Virus record (IMG/VR): IMGVR_UViG_3300027996_002186
Span: 310,001 to 374,000 of that record
DNA length: 64,000 nt
Reading direction: 5' to 3' (one strand)
The notes beneath the pieces were generated by a model. The model was not told the DNA's origin and searched no databases. It saw only the letters and a program-made list of their open reading frames with translations. How positions within the stretch are numbered: position 1 is the first letter of the stretch; the number at the start of each line of letters is the position of its first letter. Position numbers and translations under genes: made by a program. Shown here piece by piece: positions 7,475 to 59,743 of this stretch.

Positions 7475-7506
7475 AAAGGGAGAAGGTTAACTTTCTCCCT
7501 TTTTTT
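7475..7506 (+). terminator. Intrinsic terminator after clpC
   Basis: AAAGGGAGAAGG / CTTTCTCCCTTT plus T-run. Confidence 0.75.
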
Positions 7507-7532: not shown

Positions 7533-8114
7533 ATGACACTTTATGTTTTTATAACACACCAGAAAAATATTAATAATTGTTATGAAACAATATCCGAAAT
7601 GATGGATTCAGATTTCATAATTGTTCAAGGTGGATTCATTAAGAATGAATATGATGAAGAAAAAAGAATTCTAAATCTAAATTGTAATGATGGATATGCT
7701 GGACTTCCAGAAAAGGTAATGAAAACATTCCACTTTTTAATTAGTGATGATAGGTTCAATAAGTACACACACTTTTGTAAATTAGATGATGATATGAAAG
7801 TTACTAAACGGTTTGAAAATATCGAAGGTGATTATTTAGGAAATGTTCATTATGTTGATGGTAGTAGAAATTGGCACATGGGTAGATGTGGTAATTTTTG
7901 GGATAAAGTACCATATATGGGTGAGTTTACTCCTTGGTGTATGGGTGGGTTTGGTTATGTAGTTTCTAGAAATGCTTTAGAAAAAGCTTTACCTAATTTT
8001 AATTATCTAGATCACATCTACGAAGATCTTTATATTGGTATCCTACTCAAAAGTGTTGGGATAGAACCAAAGATGATAAATACAAAAGAGCATTTGGTTA
8101 GTCCAGATCATTAA
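7533..8114 (+). CDS. GT31/Galactosyl_T-like glycosyltransferase
   Basis: KLDDD (DxD), WCMGGFGYVVSR, YEDLYIGIL. Confidence 0.7.
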   Translation: MTLYVFITHQKNINNCYETISEMMDSDFIIVQGGFIKNEYDEEKRILNLNCNDGYAGLPEKVMKTFHFLISDDRFNKYTHFCKLDDDMKVTKRFENIEGDYLGNVHYVDGSRNWHMGRCGNFWDKVPYMGEFTPWCMGGFGYVVSRNALEKALPNFNYLDHIYEDLYIGILLKSVGIEPKMINTKEHLVSPDH

Positions 8115-8184
8115 TAAATTATGGAGAATAATAAAAACTATTATTTAAAATGAAAGTAGCGACAATAAAATAAAATTTAAGATA

Positions 8185-8862
8185 ATGAAAATAGGATTAT
8201 TAATAATAGCAACAAATAAATACTCGCAATTTTTACAACCACTAATTGAAAGTGCTGATAGGTTTTTTCTTAAAGACCAGGATGTAACATACTTTGTTTT
8301 TACTAATGAAGATATACAGATTAATACTAATAGGAAAGTAGTTAGAATTAATGTTGAGCATAAAGAGTGGCCCTGGATGACACTAGGTCGATATGAAATA
8401 TTCTCAAATAATTCAAACGAATTATCAAAAATGGATTATCTATATTATTGTGATGCAGATATGAGATTTGTTGATTTCGTTGGTGATGAAATTTTAAGCG
8501 AAAGAGTAGCTACACAACATTGTGGTTATTATGAAGTTAGAGGAACACCCGAAACGAATACAAATTCACTCGCATATGTTGCTCCGAATGAGGAAATGCA
8601 ATATTTAGCAGGTGGATTTAATGGTGGTACATCAGAAGAATATCTAAAAATGTCAAAAGTATTATCTGATAGAACTAATAATGATTTTGAAAAAGGTATT
8701 ATTGCTGTTTGGCACGATGAAAGTCATATGAATAGATATTTCATAGATAATAAACCAACACTTATACTAGACCCTAGTTATTGTTATCATGAGGGTAGTA
8801 ATAGACCATTTAAGCAAAGATTAGTAGCTTTATCAAAAAATCATTCAGAACTAAGAAAATAA
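8185..8862 (+). CDS. GT6 glycosyltransferase (ABO-transferase family)
   Basis: IATNKY, DADM, AGGFNGG, WHDESHMNRY. Confidence 0.9.
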   Translation: MKIGLLIIATNKYSQFLQPLIESADRFFLKDQDVTYFVFTNEDIQINTNRKVVRINVEHKEWPWMTLGRYEIFSNNSNELSKMDYLYYCDADMRFVDFVGDEILSERVATQHCGYYEVRGTPETNTNSLAYVAPNEEMQYLAGGFNGGTSEEYLKMSKVLSDRTNNDFEKGIIAVWHDESHMNRYFIDNKPTLILDPSYCYHEGSNRPFKQRLVALSKNHSELRK

Positions 8863-8877
8863 AAATAAAAATAAATT

Positions 8878-9399
8878 ATGCCTTCAAAAACAGAAAATTT
8901 TAGTAAATATCCAAACGGTATCTTTATAGAAACTGGTAGTTTCATGGGAGATGGAATACAACAAGCTCTAAACGCTGGTTTTAGTAAAATAATATCAATT
9001 GAGTTATCCGATAAATATTTCGAGATATCAAAAAATAGATTCTCTAATAATCCAAATGTTGAAATTGTAAAGGGTGATTCTTTCAAAGTATTACCCGATG
9101 TGTTAAAAGACATAGATGAGCCAGTTACATTTTGGTTAGATGGACATCATTCTTGTGGAGATACAGCTTTAGGTGACCACTGGGCACCTCTAATGCAAGA
9201 GTTGGATGTTATAAAAGAACACAAAATAAAAACACATACTATCTTAATAGATGATATGAGATGTTGGGAACTTCCAAATCCAGTACACGGTTTTTATAAA
9301 GATGATATTTTCAAAAAATTATCAGAATTAAACCCAGATTACCAATTGACATATGAAGATGGTCTTCAAGAAAATGATATTTTAGTAGCACATCCATGA
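8878..9399 (+). CDS. Class I SAM-dependent methyltransferase-like protein
   Basis: FIETGSFMGDG, SIELS, GDS, FWLDGH, ILIDDMR. Confidence 0.65.
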   Translation: MPSKTENFSKYPNGIFIETGSFMGDGIQQALNAGFSKIISIELSDKYFEISKNRFSNNPNVEIVKGDSFKVLPDVLKDIDEPVTFWLDGHHSCGDTALGDHWAPLMQELDVIKEHKIKTHTILIDDMRCWELPNPVHGFYKDDIFKKLSELNPDYQLTYEDGLQENDILVAHP

Positions 9400-10046
9400 T
9401 ATCAATCCTATTAGCAACATATAACGGTGAGAAATATCTATCTCTATCCATTGAGTCTATTTTAAACCAGACATATCAAGATTTTGAGTTATTAATTGGG
9501 TTTAATGGCACTACTGATGATTCTAAGAGTATACCTGATAAATATAATGATCCTAGAATAAGGGTTTTTGATTATGGTGATGATAAAGGAAAATCTAAAA
9601 CTCTAAATAAACTCTTAAAGGAGGCTAAATATGATTGGATTGCTTTACAAGATGATGATGATTTTTGGATTCACACAAAGTTAGAAAAACAAATAAAATT
9701 AGTTAATGATTATGATGTCATTGGTACTTTCATAAATTATATTAATGAAAATGGTGATATAACTGGTAGACCAATCTTATCAAGCTTCCCAAATGATATA
9801 AAACACATATCATTAGCTGGTATTAACCAAGTAGCCAACACAAGTGCTATTTTTAAGAAATCAGATGCTTTATTGATGAATGGTTGGAAAGATGGACTTG
9901 ATGGTATAGAGGATTATGATTTTTGGTTAAGACTTATGAGAGAGGGTAAAAGTTTTATAAATATACCCGAAGAATTAGTTCATCATAGATTACATTCGAA
10001 TAGTAATTTTAATACAAAAAGACACGATTTAAGAAAAATATTATAA
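9396..10046 (+). CDS. GT2 glycosyltransferase
   Basis: ISILLATYNGEKY, LQDDDD, EDYDFWLR. Confidence 0.9.
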   Translation: MISILLATYNGEKYLSLSIESILNQTYQDFELLIGFNGTTDDSKSIPDKYNDPRIRVFDYGDDKGKSKTLNKLLKEAKYDWIALQDDDDFWIHTKLEKQIKLVNDYDVIGTFINYINENGDITGRPILSSFPNDIKHISLAGINQVANTSAIFKKSDALLMNGWKDGLDGIEDYDFWLRLMREGKSFINIPEELVHHRLHSNSNFNTKRHDLRKIL

Positions 10047-10050
10047 ATAT

Positions 10051-10689
10051 ATGTTAATAAGCTTTAATGAAATAGTAGGTAAATATGGTAAACCCAATGG
10101 TATTATACACCTTGGTGCACACTTAGCAGAAGAGATGGTTGATTATGTTAACCAAGGAATAAAAAATGTTGTATGGGTCGAAGCAAATCCGAGTTTATAT
10201 GAAAATTTAAAAGATATAATAAAAGATACTAACCATATTGCGATATCTGAGTTATTGTCTGATGTTGATGGGGATGTTATGAAGTTCAACATAGCTAAGA
10301 ACCACTACAATGGTAATTACCAATCATCATCGGTATTGGAATTTGGAACACACGCAACTAACCACCCACATATTGTTATGGAGGGTAGTGTTAATCTAAC
10401 ATCTAAAACACTAAACACCATATTTGAAGAAAGGGAATTGGATTATTCAAATTATGATTTTGTGAATTTAGATTTACAAGGATATGAACTTCCTGTTATA
10501 AAGGGATTCGGGGATAATATTTCAAAAATGAAATATATCTATACCGAAGTAAACACCGGGGAGGTTTATATGAATTGTACTAAGTTGAGTGAGTTAGATG
10601 AATACCTTGGTGGTTATGGGTTCAAAAGAGTTGAAATTAAAATGACCGAAGCTGAATGGGGTGATGCTCTGTATATAAAAATAATATAA
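10051..10689 (+). CDS. FkbM-family methyltransferase
   Basis: IHLGAH, VEANP, NLDLQGYEL, YTEVN, WGDALY. Confidence 0.85.
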   Translation: MLISFNEIVGKYGKPNGIIHLGAHLAEEMVDYVNQGIKNVVWVEANPSLYENLKDIIKDTNHIAISELLSDVDGDVMKFNIAKNHYNGNYQSSSVLEFGTHATNHPHIVMEGSVNLTSKTLNTIFEERELDYSNYDFVNLDLQGYELPVIKGFGDNISKMKYIYTEVNTGEVYMNCTKLSELDEYLGGYGFKRVEIKMTEAEWGDALYIKII

Positions 10690-10691
10690 TT

Positions 10692-11204
10692 ATGCCTAGA
10701 ATAGAAAAATTTAAAAACAAAACATCTAATTTTATAGAAACCGGATCTTATTTAGGTGATGGTATTCAATTAGCAATCGATAGTGGATTTGATAATATAT
10801 ATTCAATAGAATTATCAGATGAATATTATAATCATTGCTCTATAAGGTTTAGTGGTAATGATAAAGTAAAATTAATAAAAGGTGATTCTTATTATGAGCT
10901 TGATAATTTAATAAACGAATCAAATGAAATATTTACTTATTGGTTAGATGGGCATTATAGTGGAGGTAATACTGGATTTGGAATTTTGGAATTCCCAATA
11001 ATGAATGAATTGGAATCTATATTGAAAAGGGGAGTTAGTGGGGAAATTATTTATATTGATGATATGAGAATTTTAAGAGATTATTCAGACTCAATTAATG
11101 AGAATAAAATTATTGAGTTAATAAATAAATATAAAATTGACTATATAATTTCATATGAGAAATCAATTCATGATGAAAAAGATATAATAGTAATTGAATA
11201 TTAA
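10692..11204 (+). CDS. Methyltransferase-like protein, paralog of 8878..9399
   Basis: FIETGSYLGDG, SIELS, YWLDGH, YIDDMR. Confidence 0.65.
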   Translation: MPRIEKFKNKTSNFIETGSYLGDGIQLAIDSGFDNIYSIELSDEYYNHCSIRFSGNDKVKLIKGDSYYELDNLINESNEIFTYWLDGHYSGGNTGFGILEFPIMNELESILKRGVSGEIIYIDDMRILRDYSDSINENKIIELINKYKIDYIISYEKSIHDEKDIIVIEY

Positions 11205-11218
11205 AAAAAAATAATTAT

Positions 11219-12070
11219 ATGAATTTTTACTTTGAAGGATATTGGCATCATAAAAATCTTAATGGTTTAAAATTGATGATCAATGAGGGTATGTGTGTTG
11301 ATTTTACTTTTAATTCTAATAAAGAATATGATTGGATAGTTAATCTTAGTGAACTTAAAGTATATGATAATCACAATGGTGGTGTTATATATGGGCCGCA
11401 AATTCTATTTCATGTAATAGACATTAATTCTGTACCAAACTTAGATGGAAGAACATATTGTAATCTTTTATCTAAATGGAATAAAAAATTATGTAATGAT
11501 ATACATAATAGTAAAATAAAATGTCTTGCTCTACCATTCGGGGTGGATGTTAATAGATTTATACCGGGTGAAAAAACAGGCAAACCAGTTATTTATTTCA
11601 AACATGTTGATATCAAAAGACTTAGTGATGTTATAGAACACCTTGGTAACGATTTTATCATTTTTGACTATCAAAAGAAATATCAGGAACAATCATTTAA
11701 TGAAGCTATCTCAAAGGCTCCTTATGCTATTTGGGTAGGTAGGCACGAAAGTCAAGGATTTGCTTTTCAAGAAACATTAAGTTGTAACACACCTATATTT
11801 GTAATTGATATAAAATCTCTACGGGATGAGGTTGTTCCTAATGTTAAGACTGTGTGGGTTGATTATCTACCTGGTCATGATTTATCTGGTACAGCCGCTT
11901 CTTATTTTGATGATACTTGTGGGTTAATATCCTATCCAGAAAATTGGAAAGAAGATTTTAAATCATTTATGGATAATTTAGATAATTACTCTCCGAGAGA
12001 GTTTATAGTAAAAAACTTATCACCAAAAGCATGTTATGACCTTTGGATAAAAACATTATCAAGTCTATGA
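11219..12070 (+). CDS. GT-B fold glycosyltransferase-like protein
   Basis: HESQGFAFQETLSCNTPIFV resembles the EX7E nucleotide-binding motif; sits in the glycan island. Confidence 0.55.
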   Translation: MNFYFEGYWHHKNLNGLKLMINEGMCVDFTFNSNKEYDWIVNLSELKVYDNHNGGVIYGPQILFHVIDINSVPNLDGRTYCNLLSKWNKKLCNDIHNSKIKCLALPFGVDVNRFIPGEKTGKPVIYFKHVDIKRLSDVIEHLGNDFIIFDYQKKYQEQSFNEAISKAPYAIWVGRHESQGFAFQETLSCNTPIFVIDIKSLRDEVVPNVKTVWVDYLPGHDLSGTAASYFDDTCGLISYPENWKEDFKSFMDNLDNYSPREFIVKNLSPKACYDLWIKTLSSL

Positions 12071-12699
12071 ATCTAGTTATAATAACATCTGTTATAAACA
12101 TATCTAAAGATCCATTAGATTATAGTAGGGTGAGATCTGTTTATACACCAGAAGAAAGGTATACACAAGTAATAAAAACAATAGAAAGTATTAATGGTAA
12201 AATAGAAAACTCTGACATTCTATTTTTAGAATCTTCTGAAATTGATATAGAAAAGGAAAATACTATAAAGGATATGGTTGATCATTATGTTAAATTAACA
12301 GATGATAAAATTAAAAAGGTGATAGATGGACAATTCAAAGCGTCTGCTGAATCAACACAAATACTAGAGGGTCTTAAAAGGATTGATATTAATAAATATC
12401 ATAATATTTATAAAATATCTGGTAGATACTCTCTTAATGATAATTTTGATTATATGAAATATGATAATGATCATAACATATTTTTTGAAACATCTGATGG
12501 GTTAAAGATAGCTACTGTTTTTTATAAGATAAATAAAAAATATATTGATACTTTCATAAGCACATTAGAATATTGCTCAAATAGTAAAAATATGTTAGAG
12601 ATGGAATTTAAGAATTCTTTTGTAGATGAGTATAAAAAAATAGAAGTTCTTGGGGTAGAAGGTAATGTTAGTGTCGATGGTAATTATATAAATTGGTAA
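12067..12699 (+). CDS. Hypothetical glycan-island protein (possible GT)
   Basis: Likely start MNLVIITSVIN at 12067; KISGRY motif; operon context. Confidence 0.45.
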   Translation: MNLVIITSVINISKDPLDYSRVRSVYTPEERYTQVIKTIESINGKIENSDILFLESSEIDIEKENTIKDMVDHYVKLTDDKIKKVIDGQFKASAESTQILEGLKRIDINKYHNIYKISGRYSLNDNFDYMKYDNDHNIFFETSDGLKIATVFYKINKKYIDTFISTLEYCSNSKNMLEMEFKNSFVDEYKKIEVLGVEGNVSVDGNYINW

Positions 12700-12700
12700 T

Positions 12701-13372
12701 ATGAATAAAATAGTAATAATAGGTGATAGTCATGCTGATTTATTCAGTGATGATGATATTAGAACCAAAAGAGGAAAGTGGGTAAATAGAGATTACGTTA
12801 ATCTGTTTGATGTTAGGTGGTTAGGACCACTTACATACTGGAGAATTTGTAGGGATAAAGAGGTAGCAATGGATTTTCATAATGGTGTATCATATAACCC
12901 AACTGGTCAAAAATCTGTTTCTACTAAAATAGAAATTGGTAGTGATGTTATGATAGTTTTTGGGGAGATTGATATCAGATGTCATATAAAAAATCATGGA
13001 GGAGATGATTATAAATCATTAATAGATGATATGTCTTCTACAATAAATGGTATAGTTGAATCATATAAGGATTCTTATAATCTACACCTATGTTCTATAA
13101 CACCACCAATGTGTGAAGATAAATGTATATCAACAAATATTAATTTACCATTTGTCGGGGATGATGAATATAGAAGCGAGGTGACACTATACTTCAATTC
13201 AAAATTAAAAGAGATATGTGTAACTAATAATATTGGGTACTTTGACACACATACACAATTTTCAGATGAAAATAACATGATAGACTTTGGTAAATCGGAT
13301 AAAATTGTACATGCCATTAAAACTAAAGAGCTAGAGGATTATATAAAAGAGTACTTTGGTATTAAAAATTAA
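12701..13372 (+). CDS. SGNH/GDSL hydrolase-like protein
   Basis: IIGDSH, FGEIDIRCH, terminal D..H. Confidence 0.6.
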   Translation: MNKIVIIGDSHADLFSDDDIRTKRGKWVNRDYVNLFDVRWLGPLTYWRICRDKEVAMDFHNGVSYNPTGQKSVSTKIEIGSDVMIVFGEIDIRCHIKNHGGDDYKSLIDDMSSTINGIVESYKDSYNLHLCSITPPMCEDKCISTNINLPFVGDDEYRSEVTLYFNSKLKEICVTNNIGYFDTHTQFSDENNMIDFGKSDKIVHAIKTKELEDYIKEYFGIKN

Positions 13373-13379
13373 ATAAGAT

Positions 13380-14330
13380 ATGAAAAATAAAAAAATATTA
13401 ATAATAGGTGGGACCGGAGCACTTGGTAAAACTTTAATAAAAAGGTATCAAGGTATAAATGATATACTTATACTGAGTCGTGATGAACACAAACATGTCT
13501 ATTTAAGTAAAGAAGAATGGGTGAGTGAAGATGTTAAATTTAGAATAGGTGATGTTAAAGATATAGATTCTTTGAGAAATACGATAGAAGACTATAAACC
13601 AGATGTTATTATTAATACAGCTGCTTTAAAGCACGTTCCTATTTGTGAGGCTAACCCATATGAATCAGTTAATGTTAATGTTATAGGACACCAAAATTTA
13701 ATACAAGCTATTAAATGGTCTTCACATACAATAGAAACATTGATATTTGTTAGTACTGATAAAGCTTGTAAACCTATTAATGTTTATGGTATGTGTAAAG
13801 CTATATCAGAGAGGCTTTATATTGAGTATGCAAATCAACAAAGTGATATAAAGGTTTGTTTGGTTAGATATGGTAATGTATTAGAATCTACTGGATCTGT
13901 CATACCATTCTTTAAGAAATTATTAGAAGAGGGTAAGACTAGTCTCCCGATTACTGATATGAGGATGACTAGATTTTTATTAACTCTAGAGAGAGCAACC
14001 GAATTGATTGATTGGGCTTATAACAATGACACACATGGTAAAATTGCCATACCTAAAGTGGAATCATTTTCTATTAAATCAATAGCAAATGCTTTAATTA
14101 AATGGAAAGGTATTGATGGTGAGTTAGATATTGTTGGTATTAGACCAGGTGAAAAGTTACATGAGGAAATGATATCGGACATTGAGTGGATGAGAACAGT
14201 TGATGCTGGTGAAAATTTCTTAATAACTGATAATTTTGTAACAAATGATACCAAATCATATAATTCACTTGATTCATTAATGGATGATGATAAGGTTTAT
14301 GAATTTTTAGAAAATAGTGAGGTAATATAA
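13380..14330 (+). CDS. UDP-GlcNAc 4,6-dehydratase (PseB/FnlA/CapD-like)
   Basis: GGTGALG, AALKHVP, STDKA, RYGNV, MTRF, GIRPGEKLHE. Confidence 0.9.
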   Translation: MKNKKILIIGGTGALGKTLIKRYQGINDILILSRDEHKHVYLSKEEWVSEDVKFRIGDVKDIDSLRNTIEDYKPDVIINTAALKHVPICEANPYESVNVNVIGHQNLIQAIKWSSHTIETLIFVSTDKACKPINVYGMCKAISERLYIEYANQQSDIKVCLVRYGNVLESTGSVIPFFKKLLEEGKTSLPITDMRMTRFLLTLERATELIDWAYNNDTHGKIAIPKVESFSIKSIANALIKWKGIDGELDIVGIRPGEKLHEEMISDIEWMRTVDAGENFLITDNFVTNDTKSYNSLDSLMDDDKVYEFLENSEVI

Positions 14331-14345
14331 AAATAATAAAATTAA

Positions 14346-16432: not shown

Positions 16433-16433
16433 T

Positions 16434-19705: not shown

Positions 19706-20523
19706 TGAGTATATTAATAATAGGATCGACTGGGATGTTAGGTAATACCCTTAAAAAATATTTAACAAAAATAAATATAGATTTTAAAACCTTAGATAGG
19801 AAAGATTTGGATTTATCCAAATGTGGATTCGATATTGTAAAGGAAAAAATAATACAATCAGGCTGTAATGTTGTTGTAAATTGCGCAGGTATTGTTAAGC
19901 AAAGGAAGAATACATCAACTGCTGATTTTATACATGTGAACTCATTAATACCACACTGGATTTCCGATATATGTGAGAAGCAGGATATGAAAATGATACA
20001 CATAACAACTGATTGTGTATTTGATGGTAAAATAGGTGATTACAAAGAAAGTGATGTACATAGTGTTTATGATGATTATGGTAGAAGTAAATCAATGGGT
20101 GAACCAAAAAACTGTACTGTAATAAGAACATCAATAATTGGTGAGGAGGAAGAAAATAAACTATCATTATTAGAGTGGGTTAAGTCAAATAAAGGTAATG
20201 AAATAGATGGGTATAAAAACCATCTATGGAATGGATTAACTTGTCTTCAATTATCTAAATTGATGAAATATATAATCGATAACGATTTATATTGGAATGG
20301 TGTCAAACATATATTCTCAAACCAAGTTAATAAATATGATTTGGTTAAAATGATTAATGAAATATACGAATTGGATATTAAAATACACCCAACTAATGGA
20401 TCAACATTGGTAAACAGAACACTTGATACAGTATATGATATTGATATATTTAATATACCTAATCTAGGTAAGCAAATAAAAGAAACAAAAGACTTCCATA
20501 ATAATATAAAAATGAGGAATTAA
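19705..20523 (+). CDS. rmlD: dTDP-4-dehydrorhamnose reductase
   Basis: GSTGMLG, NCAG, HITTDCVFDG, YGRSKSMGE, IRTSIIG. Confidence 0.85.
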   Translation: MSILIIGSTGMLGNTLKKYLTKINIDFKTLDRKDLDLSKCGFDIVKEKIIQSGCNVVVNCAGIVKQRKNTSTADFIHVNSLIPHWISDICEKQDMKMIHITTDCVFDGKIGDYKESDVHSVYDDYGRSKSMGEPKNCTVIRTSIIGEEEENKLSLLEWVKSNKGNEIDGYKNHLWNGLTCLQLSKLMKYIIDNDLYWNGVKHIFSNQVNKYDLVKMINEIYELDIKIHPTNGSTLVNRTLDTVYDIDIFNIPNLGKQIKETKDFHNNIKMRN

Positions 20524-20544
20524 AAAATATTACGATAACTTATT

Positions 20545-21657
20545 ATGAAAATAGCAATAGTAACAGGGTCAGCAGGACTCATAGGATCACAAACGTGTGA
20601 TTTTTTACACGAAAAGGGATATAAAATTGTTGGGGTTGATAATGATATGAGGTCATACTTTTTTGGAGAAGAAGCTTCAACTAATGATTCTCAAATATCT
20701 TTACAAGATAAATTAGAAAATTACGAACATCAATATGTAGATATTAGAAACTATGAAGAGATGGATAAAATATTTAAGAGACATGCTGATGATATTGAGA
20801 TGGTAATACACACAGCGGCTCAACCATCACATGATTGGGCTGTTAAAGAACCACTTACTGATTTTAGTGTGAATGCGACCGGTACGATGAATATGTTAGA
20901 GTTAACAAGACTGAATTGTCCAAAAGCAACATTTATATTTACATCAACCAATAAAGTATATGGGGATAGACCAAATCTATCTTATGATAATTCATCATCA
21001 GATTTAGAATATAATGGCATGATGATAAAGGAAGAGGAAACTAGATGGGAAGCTTATTTTGAAAGTAAAGAAACGGCTTTATCAGCTATTGATGAAAAAA
21101 TGTCAATTGACAATACAAAACACTCTGTATTTGGAGCTTCTAAAGTAGCAGCCGATGTTATGTGTCAAGAATATGGTAAATATTTCAATATGAATATAGG
21201 TATCTTTAGGGGTGGGTGTTTAACTGGTCCTAACCACGCTGGTGCTGAATTACACGGGTTCCTTTCTTATCTAGTAAAATGTGCTGTTCATAATAAACCA
21301 TATACAATATTTGGATATAAGGGTAAGCAAGTTAGGGATAATATACACTCTTGGGATTTGGTTAATATGTTTTGGCATTTTCACAAAGACCCAAAACAAG
21401 GAGAGGTTTATAATGTAGGTGGTGGTAGAAATAATTCAACTTCCATATTAGAAGCAATAGATAAAATAAATAAAATATCTGGGTATAATTGGGATAATTA
21501 TACTCTAAGTGATGAAAATAGAGTTGGTGATCATATGTGGTATATATCAGACTTATCTAAATTTAAGAATGATTACCCAGGATGGGATATAACAATAGAT
21601 TTGGACGAAACTTTGAAACAAATGGTTGAGTTTGAAAAAAATAAAATAGATAAATGA
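20545..21657 (+). CDS. NAD-dependent sugar epimerase (CDP-paratose 2-epimerase-like)
   Basis: TGSAGLIG, HTAAQPSHD, STNKVYGD, FGASK, GKQVRD, R.GD. Confidence 0.8.
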   Translation: MKIAIVTGSAGLIGSQTCDFLHEKGYKIVGVDNDMRSYFFGEEASTNDSQISLQDKLENYEHQYVDIRNYEEMDKIFKRHADDIEMVIHTAAQPSHDWAVKEPLTDFSVNATGTMNMLELTRLNCPKATFIFTSTNKVYGDRPNLSYDNSSSDLEYNGMMIKEEETRWEAYFESKETALSAIDEKMSIDNTKHSVFGASKVAADVMCQEYGKYFNMNIGIFRGGCLTGPNHAGAELHGFLSYLVKCAVHNKPYTIFGYKGKQVRDNIHSWDLVNMFWHFHKDPKQGEVYNVGGGRNNSTSILEAIDKINKISGYNWDNYTLSDENRVGDHMWYISDLSKFKNDYPGWDITIDLDETLKQMVEFEKNKIDK

Positions 21658-22493
21658 TAGTAGTTAAGCTTATGGGTGGAATGGGTAATCAGATGTTCCA
21701 ATACGCACTAGGACGGAGTTTATCAATTAAATATAACACACAATTAAAGATAGATTTATCCTTTCTTAAAAATAAGAATATGGGTACTAACTTCACTTAT
21801 AGAGATTATGATTTGAATATTTTCAATATGAGTGAGGATTTTGAAATTGGTTCGGTTAATCTACTAGGTGTTAATGAGCCAAATTTTTCATATTCACAAC
21901 CACTAATAGATATGATTAAGTCTAAAATGGATGAGGATGTAAATAACTCTTTTTTGTTAAATGGTTATTGGCAAACCCCAAAATATTTTCAAGATATAGA
22001 AGATCAAATAAGAACCGATTTTACATTTAGAGATAAGGTTGAAGAAGCAGATGAAAGCATTAAGGAAATGTTAAATCAGATAAAATCAACAAACTCGGTT
22101 TTATTGAATGTGCGTAGGACTGATTATCTAAACACAGATTACCATGGGGTTATGGGTGATGAATATTTAAAAAAAGGTGTTGAGTTAATTGAATCGAAAA
22201 TAGAAAACCCTCATTATTTTTTATTCTCAGATGATGTTGAGTGGTGTAAAGATAATATAAAATTTGATAATATGACTATTGTTGATCATTCTTATAAGGG
22301 TGATAGATTTAGTTATTATTTACAACTGATGAAGAATTGTAAACATTTTATCATACCAAATAGCTCATTTGCTTGGTGGGCAGCTTGGTTAAATGAGGAT
22401 AGTGATAAAATAGTAATAGCACCTGAGAAATGGTTTACTGATAGTAATATAAATACAAGCGATTTGATACCAGATAACTGGATAAGAATATAA
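21654..22493 (+). CDS. GT11 alpha-1,2-fucosyltransferase family
   Basis: GGMGNQMFQYA, GYWQ, NVRRTDY, FSDD, IPNSSFAWWAAWL. Confidence 0.9.
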   Translation: MIVVKLMGGMGNQMFQYALGRSLSIKYNTQLKIDLSFLKNKNMGTNFTYRDYDLNIFNMSEDFEIGSVNLLGVNEPNFSYSQPLIDMIKSKMDEDVNNSFLLNGYWQTPKYFQDIEDQIRTDFTFRDKVEEADESIKEMLNQIKSTNSVLLNVRRTDYLNTDYHGVMGDEYLKKGVELIESKIENPHYFLFSDDVEWCKDNIKFDNMTIVDHSYKGDRFSYYLQLMKNCKHFIIPNSSFAWWAAWLNEDSDKIVIAPEKWFTDSNINTSDLIPDNWIRI

Positions 22494-22502
22494 TAAAAAA
22501 GA

Positions 22503-23348
22503 ATGGATTTAGGAGTAATAGGACAAGGATTTGTCGGAGGGGCTGTTAATGAGGGTATGAAAAACTTCTTTAATATGGTCACATTTGATTTAAATGGTAA
22601 TTGTACAGAACCATCATTATTCTCTTTGATAGAGAAGGTTGATGAGACATTTTTGTGTTTACCAACACCGATGAGAAAAACAGGTGAATGTGATTTATCG
22701 ATTGTTAGAAATTGTTTAAATGATGTATCAAGTATTGTAAAGTCATTGGGTAAAAAAGATTTCATTGTGGTAATAAAATCAACGATACCACCAGGAACAA
22801 CTGAGATGTTAAATAATGAATATGATAATATCAACATTGTTTTTAACCCAGAGTTTCTAACAGAAGCTAATGCTATTGAAGATTATAAAACCCAAAATAG
22901 AATTATAATTGGTGGTGATAGACCATATTCATCAAGAATAAAACAGGTTTTTGAAAAAGCTTTCCCGAAAGTTCCGATAATTAAAACATCATCAACAATT
23001 GCGGAAATGATTAAGTATGTTACTAATACATTTTTATCAACTAAAGTATCTTTTGCTAATGAGATGTATCAGATATGTGAAGGATTAGATATTGATTTTG
23101 ATAAAGTTATAGAATATACTAAATATGATGATAGATTGGGTAATACACATTGGTCTGTACCAGGACCAGATGGTGATTTTGGATATGGTGGACATTGTTT
23201 CCCAAAAGATATATCAGCACTTAAATATGTTTCTGATGAGATGGGTGTAAACACAACTATGTTATCAGCAACCATAGAAAAGAACAAAGAAGTTCGTAGT
23301 GATAAAGATTGGGAAAAACAAAAAGGAAGAGCAGTATCAGATGAGTAA
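22503..23348 (+). CDS. ugd: UDP-glucose/GDP-mannose dehydrogenase family (short form)
   Basis: GQGFVG, CLPTP, IKSTIPPG, FNPEFL, KVSFANE, GYGGHCFPKD. Confidence 0.8.
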   Translation: MDLGVIGQGFVGGAVNEGMKNFFNMVTFDLNGNCTEPSLFSLIEKVDETFLCLPTPMRKTGECDLSIVRNCLNDVSSIVKSLGKKDFIVVIKSTIPPGTTEMLNNEYDNINIVFNPEFLTEANAIEDYKTQNRIIIGGDRPYSSRIKQVFEKAFPKVPIIKTSSTIAEMIKYVTNTFLSTKVSFANEMYQICEGLDIDFDKVIEYTKYDDRLGNTHWSVPGPDGDFGYGGHCFPKDISALKYVSDEMGVNTTMLSATIEKNKEVRSDKDWEKQKGRAVSDE

Positions 23349-24198
23349 AGTATTAGTAACCGGTGGTTTAGGATTTGTAGGATCTAATTTGGTTGATAAG
23401 TTAGTTGAACAAGGTAATGAAGTAGATGTTATAGATAATTTATCATCTATATCATCATCAAAAGAATATTGTAATCCATTAGCTAATTATTACTATGAAG
23501 ATATTAACAATATAGATATTCTGAATAAACAATATGATAAGATATTTCACTTAGCGGCAGAAGCTAGAATACAACCTTCTTTCGAAGAACCAGTTAAATG
23601 GTTTGAATCAAATGCTTTAGGTACAATTAAAGTTATGGAGTTCGCTAGAAAAAATAATTGTGGGATAGTTGTTTACTCAACCACATCATCAAAAAATCAT
23701 GGTTCTGATTATATAAGTCCTTATACATATTCAAAAGTAGTTGGAGAAGGAGTACTCAAAACTTATTCAGAGTGTTATGATATAAATTGTGCGATGGCTA
23801 CTTTTTATAATGTTTATGGTTATAGGGAACCAGAAATGGGTGAATGGGCTACAGTTGTTGCTAAATTTTTAAGACAATATAAAGATAGCGAATTAATAAC
23901 GGTTGTTGGTGATGGTCAACAGAGTAGGGATTTTACACACGTTGATGATATATGTGATGGGTTGATATCAATTAGTGATGGTGAGTGGAAGGCTGATAAC
24001 TTTGATTTGGGTCGTGGAGAACCAATTAAAATACTTGATTTAGCTATGATGGTTTATGAGGGAGAGGAAGATAATATAAATCATATTCCTTTAAGAAAAA
24101 ATGAAGGACAACATACAGAATCTAATTGGAAAGAAACTTATGAAAAATTAGGATGGAGAGCTAAAAATAATTTAGCAAATTATATAAAAGAAAAATAA
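23341..24198 (+). CDS. NAD-dependent epimerase/dehydratase
   Basis: TGGLGFVG (likely start 23341), HLAA, YxxxK, NVYG, RDFTHV. Confidence 0.85.
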   Translation: MSKVLVTGGLGFVGSNLVDKLVEQGNEVDVIDNLSSISSSKEYCNPLANYYYEDINNIDILNKQYDKIFHLAAEARIQPSFEEPVKWFESNALGTIKVMEFARKNNCGIVVYSTTSSKNHGSDYISPYTYSKVVGEGVLKTYSECYDINCAMATFYNVYGYREPEMGEWATVVAKFLRQYKDSELITVVGDGQQSRDFTHVDDICDGLISISDGEWKADNFDLGRGEPIKILDLAMMVYEGEEDNINHIPLRKNEGQHTESNWKETYEKLGWRAKNNLANYIKEK

Positions 24199-24200
24199 TT

Positions 24201-24770
24201 ATGGCACACAAAGAACAAGATGATTACATCAATAGAATAAAGAATAAATTTCCGAATTTTTTCAAAAATAAAAAAGTATTAGGTATAGGAACATTTAATG
24301 TTTGTGGTACAGAAAATGAATACTTCAATGATTGTGATTACCAGGGGTTAGACCTTGGTCCGGGAGAGGGAGTTGATATAATTTGCCCGGCACAAGATTA
24401 TGACGCACCAGATGGAACATTTGATGTTATTATTTCTTGTGAATGTTGGGAACATAATCCTTATTACAAGGAAAGCATACAAAATGCAACTAGAATGTTA
24501 AAAAGTGGTGGGTTTTTTATATTCACTTGTGCTACTACCGGAAGACCAGTACATGGTGTTAAATATTTAGAAGAAGAATGTAAACTACAATATGATGATT
24601 GGAAAACAATGCCAAATGTGTCTAGGGATAATTGGGATAATGATTATTATAAAAATTTAACCGAAGGTGATATAAGAGAATGTGTTAATATAGATGATAC
24701 ATTTTCTTCTTATGAATTTGAAGTGGAAGAAAATCACTGTGATTTATTCTTCTGGGGTATAAAAAAATAA
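24201..24770 (+). CDS. Class I SAM methyltransferase (type 11-like)
   Basis: GLDLGPG.GVD, FDVIISCECWEH, MLKSGG. Confidence 0.7.
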   Translation: MAHKEQDDYINRIKNKFPNFFKNKKVLGIGTFNVCGTENEYFNDCDYQGLDLGPGEGVDIICPAQDYDAPDGTFDVIISCECWEHNPYYKESIQNATRMLKSGGFFIFTCATTGRPVHGVKYLEEECKLQYDDWKTMPNVSRDNWDNDYYKNLTEGDIRECVNIDDTFSSYEFEVEENHCDLFFWGIKK

Positions 24771-24777
24771 TAAGAAG

Positions 24778-25572
24778 ATGATAGTTAAAGAAGATGATAT
24801 AGTATTTGTTACTAATTCACTTTATACAAAGTGGATGGATTACCAATCAAAAATAATTAAAAGGCTTTTTCCAAATAGCGATCATATAATTGTTGATGGA
24901 TCAACACCAGAATTCAAGGCAAATTGGCCAAATTCTTGGTTTTATCATTTAGATGAAATAAAAAAATCAGATAAAAAATACTATATTCATATTGATGAAG
25001 ATTTCTTTTTAACTTCTAAAGAAGAGTTATTAAAAGCTGTCCAAAAAATGGAAGATGAAAATATAGACTTATTGGGGTGTCCGGATGGATATCAACACTT
25101 CAGAGGAGCAAATCCAGTTGCTATAAACACATTTTTTATGATTGGTAGAGTAGAAGATGTTAAGAGGTTGGATGTTGATTTAAAGTCAGCTAAATATTCT
25201 ATTGTTGTTTCTGAGGGCAATATCTATCATTGGTCTAATAACTTTGGGATAAAATTCGAAGAAATATTTAAAGATGATTTCAATTATAGGTGGGAAGATC
25301 AAGGTGGATCCAATTTCAAATATGACCATGAACCGTATTATACTTTCCTTTGGTCAATGAAAGAAATGGGTTGTAAGTTTGATTATTTATATCCATTTTT
25401 TGATGATAGATTTAAATCAACCAATCCTAGATTAGAAAAAGATTCAGATGATATTGGTATACATATGTGGTATACAAGAAATTGTGATAGTAATATGGAT
25501 GTCTGGGGATTACCAAATGTAGAGAGGTATAATTTGGTTGAAAAATATATTAATGAATTATATGAAATCTAA
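24778..25572 (+). CDS. Hypothetical GT-like protein ending the glycan island
   Basis: YIHIDEDFF (DxD-like); context. Confidence 0.45.
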   Translation: MIVKEDDIVFVTNSLYTKWMDYQSKIIKRLFPNSDHIIVDGSTPEFKANWPNSWFYHLDEIKKSDKKYYIHIDEDFFLTSKEELLKAVQKMEDENIDLLGCPDGYQHFRGANPVAINTFFMIGRVEDVKRLDVDLKSAKYSIVVSEGNIYHWSNNFGIKFEEIFKDDFNYRWEDQGGSNFKYDHEPYYTFLWSMKEMGCKFDYLYPFFDDRFKSTNPRLEKDSDDIGIHMWYTRNCDSNMDVWGLPNVERYNLVEKYINELYEI

Positions 25573-59737: not shown

Positions 59738-59743
59738 TGATAT

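What the first reader, a model, noticed from the sequence alone, without database searches (positions are those of the whole stretch)
7533..25572. 18-kb co-directional glycan island without export or polymerisation genes
Seen: 21 tightly packed + strand genes, including ~8 glycosyltransferase-like, 5 methyltransferase-like, NDP-sugar enzymes and an SGNH protein. I see no multi-TM flippase, Wzy, ABC transporter or undecaprenyl-P initiating transferase. Known: cyanophage P-SSM2 and other large phages carry such islands. Inference: the product is a heavily methylated glycan attached in the cytoplasm, to virion proteins or DNA, rather than host LPS or capsule.
Basis: partly seen in the sequence, partly recalled or inferred. 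Interest (0 to 1): 0.6.

Follow-up and report, generated by a model that had tools for sequence, protein, structure and literature searches.

The report
Swappable glycan-building cassette of a huge phage
A marine "huge phage" carries 21 adjacent genes, all coding for soluble enzymes, that should build a methylated, fucose-containing, blood-group-A-like sugar chain; related phages swap the contents of this cassette at the same genomic spot, and what the sugar is attached to remains unknown.

Summary
Window 7533-25572 has 21 tightly packed + strand genes, and each gets a glycan-related assignment: 9 GT-like, 5 methyltransferases, 6 NDP-sugar or redox enzymes and 1 SGNH. None has a predicted membrane helix. 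No priming transferase, flippase, polymerase/ligase or true ABC ATPase was found in the 312-kb contig or in the complete 634-kb relative.

The genome is a marine Mahaphage-type huge phage, probably infecting Bacteroidota. The island is not unique. Its core (GT11, a GT-like protein, an FkbM methyltransferase and a phage-type GT6) is homologous to the 15-gene "LPS" island of cyanophage P-SSM2.

Not found in the papers I searched:
- The cassette sits in a fixed slot, ClpB-like gene upstream.
- It always ends with a conserved GT-A-fold enzyme that matches no Pfam family.
- Its content differs in all five relatives whose slot I examined.

The same layout is known from bacterial O-antigen loci and Megavirinae fibril-glycan clusters.

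Missing export genes do not exclude use of the host's lipid carrier and exporters, which is the usual reading in the literature. I rate a phage (virion) protein acceptor at about 0.4, the host envelope at about 0.35, and DNA as unlikely.

The parts
5339..7453 (+). ClpB/Hsp104-like double AAA+ ATPase; conserved upstream flank of the slot
   Evidence: Pfam AAA_2, AAA_lid_9 and ClpB_D2-small. 79-85% identical in L001, L010 and L021, immediately before their cassettes.
7475..7502 (.). Bidirectional terminator-like hairpin (12-bp stem followed by a T run) that separates the ClpB-like gene from the island
   Evidence: No + strand terminator-like site lies inside 7533-25759.
7533..8114 (+). GT31-like (beta-1,3-Gal/GlcNAc-transferase family) GT-A
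   Evidence: Pfam Galactosyl_T, E 4e-8. D-D-D at residues 85-87. 81% identical in L001.
8185..8862 (+). Phage-type GT6 (alpha-1,3-GalNAc/Gal transferase, histo-blood-group A/B synthase family)
   Evidence: Pfam Glyco_transf_6, E 3e-44. PDB: BoGT6a E 2e-38, human GTA/GTB about 3e-34. It has D-A-D where BoGT6a has N-A-N, and Ala-Gly-Gly at the donor-specificity positions, as in the GalNAc-using BoGT6a. At 225 aa it ends with the catalytic domain, with no BHB tail. 44% identical to the P-SSM2 GT6.
8878..9399 (+). Small class-I SAM O-methyltransferase (COMT-like fold) with no Pfam family
   Evidence: 1156 unannotated homologs. AF2 pLDDT 91. Foldseek matches COMT-type O-MTs at TM 0.6-0.66, E 1e-6.
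9396..10046 (+). GT2 glycosyltransferase
   Evidence: Pfam Glycos_transf_2, E 1e-24. 74-80% identical in L001, L023 and L024.
10051..10689 (+). FkbM-family methyltransferase
   Evidence: Pfam Methyltransf_21, E 4e-12. 37% identical to PSSM2_267.
10692..11204 (+). Paralog of 8878-9399 (second COMT-like O-MT)
   Evidence: 41% identity, E 3e-39.
11219..12070 (+). GT-like protein (lead only); homolog of P-SSM2 PSSM2_266
   Evidence: ESM Atlas: viral 'putative glycosyltransferase' clusters score 0.98-0.99, and the nearest Pfam-bearing clusters are Glycos_transf_1. Pfam GT1 only at E 0.074. 26% identical to PSSM2_266. No PDB sequence hit.
12043..12699 (+). GT-like protein (lead only; WavE-like); probable true start at ATG 12067
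   Evidence: ESM Atlas: viral clusters score 0.97-0.98, and the nearest Pfam-bearing cluster is WavE at 0.89. No PDB hit. 83% identical in L001.
12701..13372 (+). SGNH/GDSL-type esterase or acyl-transfer enzyme (probably sugar O-acetyl handling)
   Evidence: In 19 homologs G-D-S-H, G-E-I-D and D200..H204 are invariant. PDB profile hits: sialate O-acetylesterase E 1.3e-3 and GDSL lipases.
13380..14330 (+). UDP-HexNAc 4,6-dehydratase (PseB/FnlA/CapD-like short form)
   Evidence: Pfam Polysacc_synt_2, E 4e-79. NCBIfam PseB 263 bits and FnlA 194 bits, both below the equivalog cut-offs. 91% identical in L001.
14346..15590 (+). NDP-4-keto-6-deoxy-sugar 3-C-methyltransferase (TylC3/TcaB9/KijD1 type)
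   Evidence: Pfam Methyltransf_13, _23 and _14. PDB 4rv9 and 3ndi, E about 1e-54, aligned over the full length.
15590..16432 (+). GT2-like glycosyltransferase (weak)
   Evidence: Pfam Glycos_transf_2, E 1e-4, just under the cut-off. The genome search places it over the cut-off when neighbouring stretches are counted. 56% identical in L001.
16392..18950 (+). 852-aa three-domain protein: SDR (partial), xylose-isomerase-like TIM barrel and FAD-binding oxidoreductase. Probable start at 16434. Specific role unknown.
   Evidence: Pfam Epimerase 1.6e-7, AP_endonuc_2 2e-16, DAO 3e-3. NCBIfam keto-sugar epimerase models, E 4e-15. Absent from L001.
18950..19705 (+). GT2_4-type glycosyltransferase
   Evidence: Pfam Glyco_tranf_2_4, E 1e-7. 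Absent from L001.
19696..20523 (+). RmlD-like NDP-4-keto-sugar reductase
   Evidence: Pfam RmlD_sub_bind, E 9e-22. NCBIfam rmlD 73 bits, below the cut-off.
20545..21657 (+). Extended SDR, GalE or 4,6-dehydratase-like (specificity open)
   Evidence: Pfam Epimerase, E 1e-40. NCBIfam galE 108 bits and dTDP-Glc dehydratase 105 bits.
21654..22493 (+). GT11 (alpha-1,2-fucosyltransferase family)
   Evidence: Pfam Glyco_transf_11, E 8e-30. The GDP-binding motif reads N-V-R-R-T-D-Y, so R-R-x-D is kept and His is replaced by Asn. 32% identical to PSSM2_265.
22503..23348 (+). Short NDP-sugar 6-dehydrogenase (UGDH-like) that lacks the C-terminal UDP-binding domain
   Evidence: NCBIfam TIGR03026 matches model positions 73-296 of 413. 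GxGxxG and the catalytic G-G-H-C-F-P-K-D are intact. Error-free contigs from independent runs cover it. Absent from L001.
23299..24198 (+). Extended SDR, either an NDP-sugar 4-epimerase or a UDP-GlcA decarboxylase (ambiguous); probable start at 23341
   Evidence: PDB: 4-epimerase 4zrm E 2e-32, UXS1 E 1e-25. 33% identical to PSSM2_270.
24201..24770 (+). Class-I SAM methyltransferase
   Evidence: Pfam Methyltransf_11 and _23. 88% identical in L001.
24778..25572 (+). Conserved terminal GT-A-fold glycosyltransferase with no Pfam family; closes the cassette in every relative examined
   Evidence: 183 homologs, several on contigs of up to 445-635 kb. H71-x-D73-E74-D75 is invariant. AF2 pLDDT 92. Foldseek: LH3 GT domain, PBCV-1 A64R, Mimivirus R699 and Fringe, E 4e-6 to 1e-4. 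Only 284 representatives among 1.84 billion proteins. Fusions with GT7 and GT2 domains exist. Its position is conserved in L001, L010, L021, L022 and L023.
25538..25759 (+). Conserved mini-ORF resembling a short segment of the Gp23-type major capsid protein; downstream neighbour of the cassette (belonging uncertain)
   Evidence: Pfam Gp23 positions 159-194, E 3e-7. PHROG 138 major head protein. 34% identical to residues 335-375 of the relative's MCP. Conserved in five relatives.

Best explanation
SHOWN
- The island is a self-contained, membrane-independent glycan-assembly cassette of a marine Mahaphage-type huge phage.
- Its enzymes are all soluble.
- It lies in a fixed slot between a ClpB-like gene and a conserved GT-A gene.
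- Its core is homologous to the P-SSM2 cyanophage island.
- Its content is reshuffled between relatives.

INFERRED FROM FAMILY KNOWLEDGE
In the infected cytoplasm the cassette would:
(a) tailor nucleotide sugars. A PseB/FnlA-like 4,6-dehydratase, a TylC3-type 3-C-methyltransferase and an RmlD-like reductase would give a branched 6-deoxy-3-C-methyl-HexNAc. Further SDRs would give 4-epimers and possibly UDP-pentose.
(b) assemble a hetero-oligosaccharide with up to nine Leloir GTs. GT31 followed by GT11 would give a Fuc-alpha-1,2-Gal (H-type) motif. The D-x-D phage-type GT6 would cap it with alpha-1,3-GalNAc, giving a blood-group-A-like end.
(c) decorate it with O-methyl groups and probably O-acetyl groups.

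MY COMMITMENT ON THE OPEN STEP
The acceptor is a phage-encoded protein, most plausibly a virion surface component. The conserved terminal GT-A would handle the conserved part of the structure, and the variable genes would diversify the outer part. This is what chloroviruses and Megavirinae do with their capsid and fibril glycans.
For: Solubility and missing export genes
- No island product has a hydrophobic segment, and no transporter-sized membrane protein lies on the contig.
- No PGT, WecA-type enzyme, Wzx, Wzy/WaaL or true ABC ATPase in the contig or in the complete 634-kb relative.

Phage-type GT6
- The GT6 has D-A-D, is a minimal 225-aa domain and has no basic-hydrophobic tail.
- PMC3516806 states that bacterial O-antigen GT6 enzymes carry a C-terminal membrane-association domain and N-x-N. 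The P-SSM2-type clade lacks that domain and keeps D-x-D. A member of the P-SSM2-type clade makes A antigen from UDP-GalNAc and H acceptors.

A long-resident viral toolkit
- The GT11, PSSM2_266-like, FkbM and GT6 genes are shared at 26-44% identity with a cyanophage whose host belongs to a different phylum.
- The GT-A, the small O-MT, 11219 and 12043 have only unannotated viral or metagenomic relatives.
- The closest 'bacterial' GT6 hits are mis-binned phage contigs.

Architecture
- The flanks and the terminal GT-A are conserved, and the interior differs in all five relatives.
- Megavirinae fibril-glycan clusters have the same layout: 6-33 genes, clade-specific, between two conserved genes (PMC10117803).

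Fold of the terminal GT-A
- It is nearest to GT-A enzymes that act on proteins or protein-bound glycans: LH3, PBCV-1 A64R and Fringe. This is similarity of fold only.
Against: - No acceptor was identified.
- No Ser/Thr-rich, collagen-like or other obvious acceptor protein, and no prolyl/lysyl hydroxylase, was found.
- The island lies among replication and chaperone genes, not in a structural module.
- Timing is unknown, because no recognisable promoter class lies upstream.
- The GT families present are the ones bacteria use on lipid-linked O-units, and soluble GTs are normal there. Absence of export genes therefore does not discriminate.
- The GT-A occurs fused to GT7 and GT2 domains, which suggests chain building rather than priming.
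- The literature favours host-surface modification (PMC7824862).
- Two of the nine GT assignments are leads only.
- The UGDH-like gene lacks a domain.
- The GT11 motif has Asn in place of His.
Confidence: 0.4

Rival explanations
1. Host-envelope remodelling. The phage GTs work at the cytoplasmic face on the host's own undecaprenyl-(pyro)phosphate-linked or lipid-A-core intermediates. The host's priming enzyme, flippase or ABC exporter, and ligase do the rest. The infected cell then displays an altered O-antigen, capsule or O-glycoprotein glycan, which could exclude superinfecting phages or keep progeny from sticking to debris.
For: - This is the standard reading of P-SSM2-type islands. Polymorphism between related phages is taken as O-antigen-like diversification (PMC7824862 and PMC12801897).
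- GT2, GT6, GT11, GT25, GT10, FkbM MTs, an SGNH enzyme and PseB-like and RmlD-like enzymes are typical O-antigen or Bacteroidota O-glycan cluster content.
- The fixed-slot, variable-content layout equally resembles bacterial O-antigen loci.
- Huge phages encode many envelope-directed proteins (bioRxiv 10.64898/2026.10.24.761521).
- Soluble GTs are the rule for cytoplasmic O-unit assembly.
Against: - There is no phage-encoded link to the lipid carrier at all.
- The GT6 lacks the membrane-binding tail that bacterial O-antigen GT6 enzymes have.
- Host Wzx, Wzy and ligase enzymes tend to be structure-selective (background knowledge). Constantly reshuffled phage cassettes would therefore need permissive host machinery.
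- The core module is shared between phages whose hosts belong to different phyla.
- The nearest relatives of several genes are viral, not host-like.
Confidence: 0.35
2. DNA hypermodification. The island glycosylates hydroxymethyl-pyrimidines in phage DNA with a complex glycan to evade restriction and CRISPR.
For: - Phage GTs that build multi-sugar DNA glycans are known (Pyle et al. 2024, as cited in PMC12619734).
- The island sits beside replication genes (gp32 and exonucleases).
Against: - Nine GTs, a C-methyl branched-sugar pathway and five MTs go far beyond any DNA glycan I am aware of (background knowledge).
- GT6, GT11 and GT31 act on glycan acceptors: PaGT6 needs a fucosylated acceptor.
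- No thymidylate-synthase-family hydroxymethylase lies on the contig. The relative's single ThyA-family gene scores 332 bits over the full model, like an ordinary ThyA. I did not test its specificity.
Confidence: 0.04
3. A non-anchored or small-molecule product: a free methylated oligosaccharide, a glycolipid other than LPS, a glycosylated secondary metabolite, or glycosylation of host cytoplasmic proteins.
For: - C-methyltransferases of the TylC3/TcaB9 type are best known from antibiotic sugar pathways.
- Iyer et al. propose secondary-metabolite roles for a second cyanophage sugar cluster.
- No acceptor could be found here.
Against: - No aglycone-forming genes (PKS, NRPS, terpene) lie in or next to the island.
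- The GT6, GT11 and GT31 combination builds a glycan epitope, which only makes sense if it is displayed.
- Clade-wide diversification points to a recognised surface.
Confidence: 0.1

Closest known systems
The 15-gene 'LPS/cell-surface' glycan island of cyanophage P-SSM2 (PSSM2_257-271) and its counterparts in other large T4-like cyanophages
   Same: - A phage-encoded, co-directional cluster of NDP-sugar epimerases, GT2, GT1, GT11-like and GT6 enzymes plus methyltransferases, with no annotated export genes.
- Direct homology of GT6 (44%), FkbM MT (37%), GT11-like (32%), an SDR (33%), PSSM2_266 (26%) and GT2.
- The acceptor is experimentally unknown.
   Different: - This island is larger (21 genes, 18 kb).
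- It lies in a >600-kb-class phage that probably infects Bacteroidota, not cyanobacteria.
- It adds a C-methyl branched-sugar pathway, two COMT-like O-MTs, an SGNH enzyme and a tri-domain redox protein.
- It ends with a GT-A family that is absent from cyanophages and all other deposited phages.
- It occupies a fixed slot, with cassette-like replacement across the clade.
Megavirinae (Mimivirus, Moumouvirus, Megavirus) fibril-glycosylation gene clusters
   Same: - Virus-encoded clusters of 6-33 genes for rare bacterial-type sugars plus GTs.
- Clade-specific content between two conserved flanking genes.
- AT-rich like the rest of the genome.
- All cytoplasmic (PMC10117803).
- ESM Atlas places 11219 and 12043 next to clusters labelled Nucleocytoviricota.
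   Different: - Their hosts are eukaryotic, and virion glycans have been demonstrated chemically.
- Here nothing is demonstrated, the sugars predicted differ, and the Atlas taxon labels may themselves be mis-assignments.
Bacterial O-antigen / capsule loci that make blood-group-like antigens (for example Bacteroides ovatus BoGT6a)
   Same: - GT6 of the A-synthase type, predicted to use a fucosylated acceptor.
- GT11 and GT31-like partners.
- A variable cassette between conserved flanks.
   Different: - The bacterial enzymes are N-x-N, metal-independent, and carry a membrane-binding BHB tail (PMC3516806).
- As a rule, bacterial loci also include a flippase/polymerase pair or an ABC exporter (background knowledge). 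Neither is present here.
Chlorovirus capsid N-glycosylation machinery (PBCV-1 A64R and others)
   Same: - Soluble virus-encoded GT-A enzymes acting in the cytoplasm.
- A64R is among the structural neighbours of the terminal GT-A.
- From background knowledge, not checked in a paper here: the sugars are methylated, and a conserved core carries strain-variable outer sugars.
   Different: - The chlorovirus genes are scattered rather than clustered (background knowledge).
- No sequence homology was detected, only similarity of fold (TM about 0.4).
Mycobacteriophage virion glycosylation (Freeman et al. 2023, known here only through citations in PMC12619734)
   Same: Phage-encoded GTs put glycans on capsid and tail-tube subunits inside a bacterial cytoplasm.
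   Different: From background knowledge, not verified here: those phages carry only a few GT genes, placed beside the structural genes they modify. Here there are 21 genes, remote from any structural module.

Membership tests
P-SSM2-type phage glycan ('LPS-like') island | Located in a tailed-phage genome | tested here: met
   gp32, T4 Rnl1 and RNR lie in the window. The nearest records are huge-phage genomes. IMG/VR lists the contig as a virus record.
P-SSM2-type phage glycan ('LPS-like') island | Co-directional cluster of several GTs, NDP-sugar SDRs and methyltransferases | tested here: met
P-SSM2-type phage glycan ('LPS-like') island | Homology of its genes to the P-SSM2 island | tested here: met
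   Six genes match PSSM2_257-270 at 23-44% identity, E 1e-9 to 1e-62.
P-SSM2-type phage glycan ('LPS-like') island | No lipid-carrier priming or export genes in the island | tested here: met
   The P-SSM2 annotation also lists none.
Bacterial O-antigen / capsule locus (Wzx/Wzy- or ABC-dependent) | Initiating phosphoglycosyl transferase (WbaP/PglC or WecA type) | tested here: not met
   PF02397 and PF00953 gave no match in the contig or in the 634-kb relative. The controls were positive.
Bacterial O-antigen / capsule locus (Wzx/Wzy- or ABC-dependent) | Flippase plus polymerase/ligase, or an ABC exporter | tested here: not met
   PF01943 and PF04932 gave no match, and PF00005 gave only sub-cut-off P-loop hits. 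No ORF has more than 5 hydrophobic segments.
Serotype-converting Gtr-type phage systems | GtrA, GtrB and GtrC membrane proteins | tested here: inconclusive
   No island product has a TM segment, and no ORF on the contig has more than 5 hydrophobic segments, so nothing has the size of a multi-pass GtrC-type transferase. The GtrA family itself (PF04138; about 4 helices, about 120 aa) was not searched, so a small GtrA elsewhere on the contig is not excluded.
Phage-type (clade 1) GT6 as defined in PMC3516806 | [quoted passage not shown] | tested here: met
   The protein is 225 aa. It aligns to BoGT6a 1-233 through residue 220, with D-A-D opposite N-A-N. Its C-terminal 30 residues are not basic-hydrophobic-basic. 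It is 44% identical to the P-SSM2 GT6.
Phage-type (clade 1) GT6 as defined in PMC3516806 | Transfers GalNAc to a Fuc-alpha-1,2-Gal acceptor in a metal-dependent reaction | not testable with these tools
   Inferred from Ala-Gly-Gly at the donor-specificity positions and from the reported PaGT6 activity. An enzyme assay is needed.
Megavirinae-type virion glycosylation cluster | Clade-specific gene content in a conserved genomic slot | tested here: met
   compared with PMC10117803.
Megavirinae-type virion glycosylation cluster | Late expression together with structural genes | tested here: inconclusive
   Two intergenic motif classes were found on the contig, but neither precedes the island. No RNA run holds the sequence.
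Megavirinae-type virion glycosylation cluster | The glycan is chemically present on virions | not testable with these tools
   The phage is uncultured.
DNA-glycosylating hypermodification system | A hydroxymethyl-pyrimidine-forming ThyA homolog plus DNA-directed GTs | tested here: inconclusive
   PF00303 is absent from the contig. The relative has one copy with a full-length 332-bit match, and its specificity was not tested. Families of DNA-directed GTs were not searched.
SGNH hydrolase superfamily (gene 12701-13372) | Block I G-D-S, block III G-x-x-D and block V D..H catalytic residues | tested here: met
   The residues are invariant in 19 homologs. PDB profile hits to SGNH esterases have E 1e-3. 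The Asp-His spacing is one residue longer than the canonical D-x-x-H.
TylC3/TcaB9 sugar 3-C-methyltransferases (gene 14346-15590) | Zn-binding N-domain, SAM domain and C-terminal domain, with a full-length match to solved members | tested here: met
   Pfam Methyltransf_13, _23 and _14. PDB 4rv9, 3ndi and 5t64, E 1e-49 to 1e-55 over residues 9-385.

The most novel reading that the evidence does not exclude
The largest known phages coat their own virions with self-made, strain-variable, methylated histo-blood-group-like glycans. This would be a bacteriophage counterpart of giant-virus fibril glycosylation. The clade-specific terminal GT-A would tie the glycan to a conserved phage acceptor, and the swappable cassette would generate 'virion serotypes' in the sea.
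Probability: 0.35. Interest if true: 0.75.

Novelty: new member of a known kind. Interest (0 to 1): 0.45.

Why it matters
Glycan ("LPS-like") islands in phages have been known since the P-SSM2 genome, yet their acceptor has not been tested in any paper I found.

- **Wider distribution.** The same toolkit, with a homologous core, is a clade-wide, fixed-slot, cassette-swapping feature of the largest phages. It recurs unchanged in marine metagenomes from at least 15 studies.
- **Concrete handles for experiments.** These are a GT-A enzyme confined to this clade of huge phages, a phage-type GT6 and GT11 pair predicted to make an A/H-like epitope detectable with standard lectins and antibodies, and a rare C-methyl sugar pathway.
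- **If the glycan is on virions.** Huge phages would converge with giant viruses in making their own surface glycans.
- **If it is on the host.** The cassette would be a large, diversifying system for rewriting the host's serotype during lytic infection.

Either way, phage-type GT6 enzymes are relevant to the proposed origin of vertebrate ABO synthases (PMC3516806).

Tried and rejected
1. **Collagen/hydroxylysine acceptor.** The idea came from LH3-like fold hits and from a 2OG oxygenase beside the GT-A in L023. No G-x-y repeats and no PF13640 gene were found in the contig or the relative, so I dropped it.
2. **Population-level loss of the UGDH/SDR pair as the cause of about 0.7 k-mer shares.** Error-free fragments tile the whole stretch in three partial holders. 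The low shares reflect low coverage, so this is rejected.
3. **Inferring timing from promoters.** Two enriched intergenic motifs were found, but neither lies upstream of the island. No conclusion.
4. **Terminal GT-A as counterpart of P-SSM2's terminal glucosyltransferase, or a paralog of the island's GT31.** hhalign probability was below 1%. Rejected.
5. **Complex prediction of the GT-A with the adjacent MCP-like mini-protein.** The verdict was 'no answer' with score 0.01. This is evidence neither for nor against binding.
6. **Searching for a bacterial source of GT6.** The best 'Flavobacterium' and 'archaeon' MAG hits are phage-like fragments. True bacterial hits are 43% identical or less.
7. 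**PDB sequence searches and PHROGs for 11219 and 12043.** Nothing was found, so these remain GT-like leads only.
8. **Sigma-70 promoter scan.** It found 140 sites against 146 expected by chance, so it is uninformative.
9. **The second glyco-locus at G000 68-71 kb.** It holds a lone GT2-like gene and an SDR among nucleotide-metabolism genes, with no export function.

No alternative genetic code was used.

Full report
**WHAT THE GENOME IS**

- The window is about 29% G+C.
- Around the island it encodes gp32, T4-type RNA ligase 1, an RNR small subunit, an Acb1/2',5'-ligase-exonuclease fusion, a ClpB-like ATPase, DnaJ and Hsp70.
- The only similar deposited genomes are the >630-kb 'uncultured phage' records. 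For LR745206.1, gp32 is 85% identical and 44% of the island DNA is covered at 81.5%. LR756502.1 is the next closest.
- Al-Shayeb et al. place all genomes >634 kb in the 'Mahaphage' clade and predict Bacteroidetes hosts (PMC7162821).
- The window lies on a 312,709-bp linear IMG/VR virus contig. The contig is probably about half a genome. The relative is 634,780 bp, and a protein identical to one island product occurs on a 551-kb contig.
- The DNA is marine. At least 15 studies from 2012-2020 hold it, several with all sampled words. Error-free contigs from three further independent runs tile the tested 6 kb.

Three independent hints point to a Bacteroidota host:
- T-A-T-A-T-T-T-G is enriched 13-31-fold in intergenic DNA, mostly 17-31 nt before start codons. 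From background knowledge, this is the Bacteroidota sigma-A -7 box TAnnTTTG.
- The printed leaders are A/T-rich, with no Shine-Dalgarno motif visible by eye. I did not test this against a control.
- A closely related cassette fragment was binned into a Flavobacterium MAG.

**THE OBSERVATION**

It is accurate. Twenty-one + strand ORFs fill 7533-25572. The gaps are at most 79 nt, and nine junctions overlap.

A 12-bp-stem terminator hairpin (7475-7502) precedes the island, and no + strand terminator-like site lies inside it. This fits one long transcription unit, although internal promoters cannot be excluded.

Every gene gets a glycan-related assignment:
- Six GTs by Pfam: GT31, GT6, GT2, weak GT2, GT2_4 and GT11.
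- One GT by fold: 24778-25572, with pLDDT 92, a GT-A fold and an invariant H-x-D-E-D.
- Two GT-like leads: 11219 and 12043, from ESM Atlas only.
- Five methyltransferases: an FkbM type, a TylC3/TcaB9-type C-MT, a class-I MT, and two paralogous COMT-like O-MTs from a 1156-member unannotated family.
- One SGNH enzyme.
- Six NDP-sugar or redox proteins.

No island product reaches the hydropathy threshold for a membrane helix.

**EXPORT AND INITIATION GENES ARE ABSENT GENOME-WIDE**

- The contig has only eight ORFs with three or more hydrophobic segments. The maximum is five, in a 203-aa protein, and one ORF looks rhomboid-like by eye.
- I searched for Bac_transf, WecA/MraY-type GT4, Wzx and Wzy/WaaL in the contig and in the complete LR745206.1. 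All gave nothing, while 10-13 of 14 control genomes matched.
- ABC_tran gave only sub-threshold P-loop hits.
- A second, small glyco-locus at G000 68-71 kb holds a lone GT2-like gene and an SDR among DHFR and PRPP synthetase genes.

The island sits in a fixed slot.
- *Upstream:* the ClpB-like gene is 79-85% identical in relatives.
- *Downstream:* the 264-aa GT-A, a 73-78-aa mini-ORF, a 199-aa gene, an approximately 640-aa gene and gp32 are all conserved.

Between these flanks the content changes:
- **LR745206.1** lacks seven of the window's genes: both COMT-like MTs, the FkbM MT, the tri-domain protein, GT2_4, and the UGDH-like and SDR pair. In their place it has another FkbM MT, a CE4 deacetylase, a sugar N-formyltransferase and an unknown gene.
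- **LR756502.1** has a 23-kb cassette that shares only GT6, a C-MT and GT11, at 31-58% identity.
- **A 629-kb JGI contig** has a 7.5-kb cassette: two SDRs, two GT2s, GT6, FkbM and GT11.
- **A 445-kb contig** adds DegT and FdtA.
- **A 290-kb contig** uses GT47, GT25, GT10 and two FkbM MTs.

The terminal GT-A is present in every case. The family is small: 284 representatives among 1.84 billion proteins. Among deposited phages it occurs only in these two huge-phage records. In some members it is fused to GT7 or GT2 domains.

**RELATION TO KNOWN SYSTEMS**

- The GT6 is 44% identical to that of cyanophage P-SSM2.
- P-SSM2's 15-gene island (PSSM2_257-271) also holds homologs of the GT11, of 11219, of the FkbM MT, of an SDR and of a GT2. 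The window's island is therefore a relative of a known kind of phage island.
- The literature interprets such islands as modifiers of host O-antigen or capsule that pre-empt other phages. It cites their polymorphism between related phages and offers no experimental evidence (PMC7824862, PMC12801897).
- The other close analogue is the Megavirinae fibril-glycosylation cluster: 6-33 genes, clade-specific, between two conserved genes, expressed late, with glycans shown on virions (PMC10117803).

**WHAT IT PROBABLY MAKES** (inference from family knowledge)

- *Branched sugar:* the adjacent PseB/FnlA-like UDP-HexNAc 4,6-dehydratase and the TylC3/TcaB9-type 3-C-methyltransferase, together with the RmlD-like reductase five genes further on, form a plausible route to a 6-deoxy-3-C-methyl-HexNAc. 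In the nearest relative the same branch gains a deacetylase and an N-formyltransferase, so the branch is re-tailored in modules.
- *Blood-group-like end:* GT31-like, GT11 and GT6 together are the enzyme types needed for Gal-beta-1,3-R, then Fuc-alpha-1,2-Gal, then GalNAc-alpha-1,3(Fuc)Gal.
  - The GT6 keeps D-x-D. Its donor-specificity positions are Ala-Gly-Gly, like the GalNAc-using BoGT6a.
  - PaGT6, a member of the same phage-type clade, makes A antigen in a metal-dependent way (PMC3516806).
- *GDP-fucose:* I found no dedicated synthesis genes in the island, so the host would have to supply it.

Caveats:
- The GT11 motif reads N-V-R-R-T-D-Y, with His replaced by Asn.
- The UGDH-like protein keeps its catalytic Cys motif but lacks the C-terminal UDP-binding domain. 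It is identical in independent samples.
- The neighbouring SDR is ambiguous between a 4-epimerase and UXS.

**WHERE THE GLYCAN GOES**

This cannot be settled from sequence.

In favour of a soluble, phage-encoded (virion) acceptor:
- There is no link to the lipid carrier anywhere in the 634-kb relative.
- The phage-type GT6 lacks the membrane-association tail that bacterial O-antigen GT6 enzymes carry (PMC3516806).
- The core module is shared by phages whose hosts belong to different phyla, and several families appear to be virus-only.
- The architecture matches Megavirinae clusters.
- The terminal GT-A has fold neighbours that act on proteins or protein glycans.

In favour of the host envelope:
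- The GT families are typical of O-antigen clusters.
- Soluble GTs are normal for O-unit assembly.
- The cassette layout equally recalls O-antigen loci.
- Huge phages encode many envelope proteins.
- No acceptor protein was found.
- The island sits with replication genes, not structural genes.

DNA is unlikely, because GT6 needs a fucosylated glycan acceptor and the island is far more complex than any DNA glycan I know of.

My odds are: phage protein 0.4, host envelope 0.35, other soluble or small-molecule product 0.1, DNA 0.04. The remainder is unassigned.

**VERDICT**

This is a new member of a known kind, the P-SSM2-type phage glycan island. The clade-wide fixed-slot cassette architecture and the GT-A family are not mentioned in any paper I found. 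Interest is moderate.

Noticed in passing
window 25538-25759 (+); window ~59618-59809 (-) (= G000:122290-122481 +); G000:293121-293342 (+): Three tiny ORFs (59-78 aa) each resemble a different short segment of the Gp23-type major capsid protein (model positions 159-194, 197-259 and 302-354). All three share a basic C-terminal '...K-I-x-N-I-F' tail. The relative LR745206.1 has the same mini-ORFs in addition to a full-length MCP elsewhere. They are about 32-34% identical to that MCP. Their purpose is unknown; they could be decoys for capsid-sensing defences or remnants.
   Followed up: partly
whole contig G000; e.g. window 25787-25794 upstream of the HD-domain gene at 25799: T-A-T-A-T-T-T-G is enriched 13-31-fold in intergenic DNA (27 sites, mostly 17-31 nt before start codons). 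It matches the Bacteroidota sigma-A -7 promoter box TAnnTTTG. A second motif, T-T-A-A-T-A-T-A-T-A, occurs 72 times, peaking 5 and 20-27 nt before starts, upstream of both RNR and giant ORFs. It may be a phage-specific promoter or leader element.
   Followed up: partly
window 22503-23348 (+): The UDP-glucose-dehydrogenase-like gene is truncated to 281 aa. Its NAD motif and catalytic Cys motif are intact, but the whole C-terminal UDP-binding domain is missing. It is nevertheless identical in independent marine samples. It may work with a partner, or it may be a maintained remnant.
   Followed up: partly
window 16392-18950 (+): An 852-aa fusion of a partial SDR, a xylose-isomerase-like TIM barrel and an FAD-oxidoreductase N-terminus, with about 260 unassigned C-terminal residues. 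It is absent from the nearest relative. It may be a keto-sugar epimerising or oxidising enzyme.
   Followed up: no
window 34043-35353 (-): A 436-aa fusion of a 2',5'-RNA-ligase/Acb1-like phosphodiesterase domain (anti-CBASS Acb1, E 9e-6) with an RNase T/DnaQ-type exonuclease. In relative L021 the two parts are separate genes.
   Followed up: no
window 5339-7453, 42898-43989, 50461-52341: The phage encodes a full chaperone set within 47 kb: a ClpB-like disaggregase, DnaJ and Hsp70/DnaK (Hsp70 scores 815 bits).
   Followed up: no
G000 (whole contig): The CheckV completeness of 91% looks too high. The closest relative is 634,780 bp, a protein identical to one island product lies on a 551-kb contig, and the relative's major capsid and ThyA genes fall outside the part that matches this contig.
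   Followed up: partly
L024 (CAYOCC010000012.1, 'Flavobacterium sp.' MAG); L025 (NYZO01000016.1, 'archaeon' MAG): Both contigs carry the same GT6, GT2 and MT gene order. L024 also has three Laminin_G_3 lectin-domain genes and a T4-type dNMP kinase. They are probably phage fragments mis-binned into cellular MAGs.
   Followed up: partly
L036:2175-3431 (= G000:64174-65430, +): A phage-encoded PAS-domain histidine-kinase-like protein (PAS_9 plus HATPase_c) lies next to DHFR, PRPP synthetase and a lone GT2-like gene.
   Followed up: no
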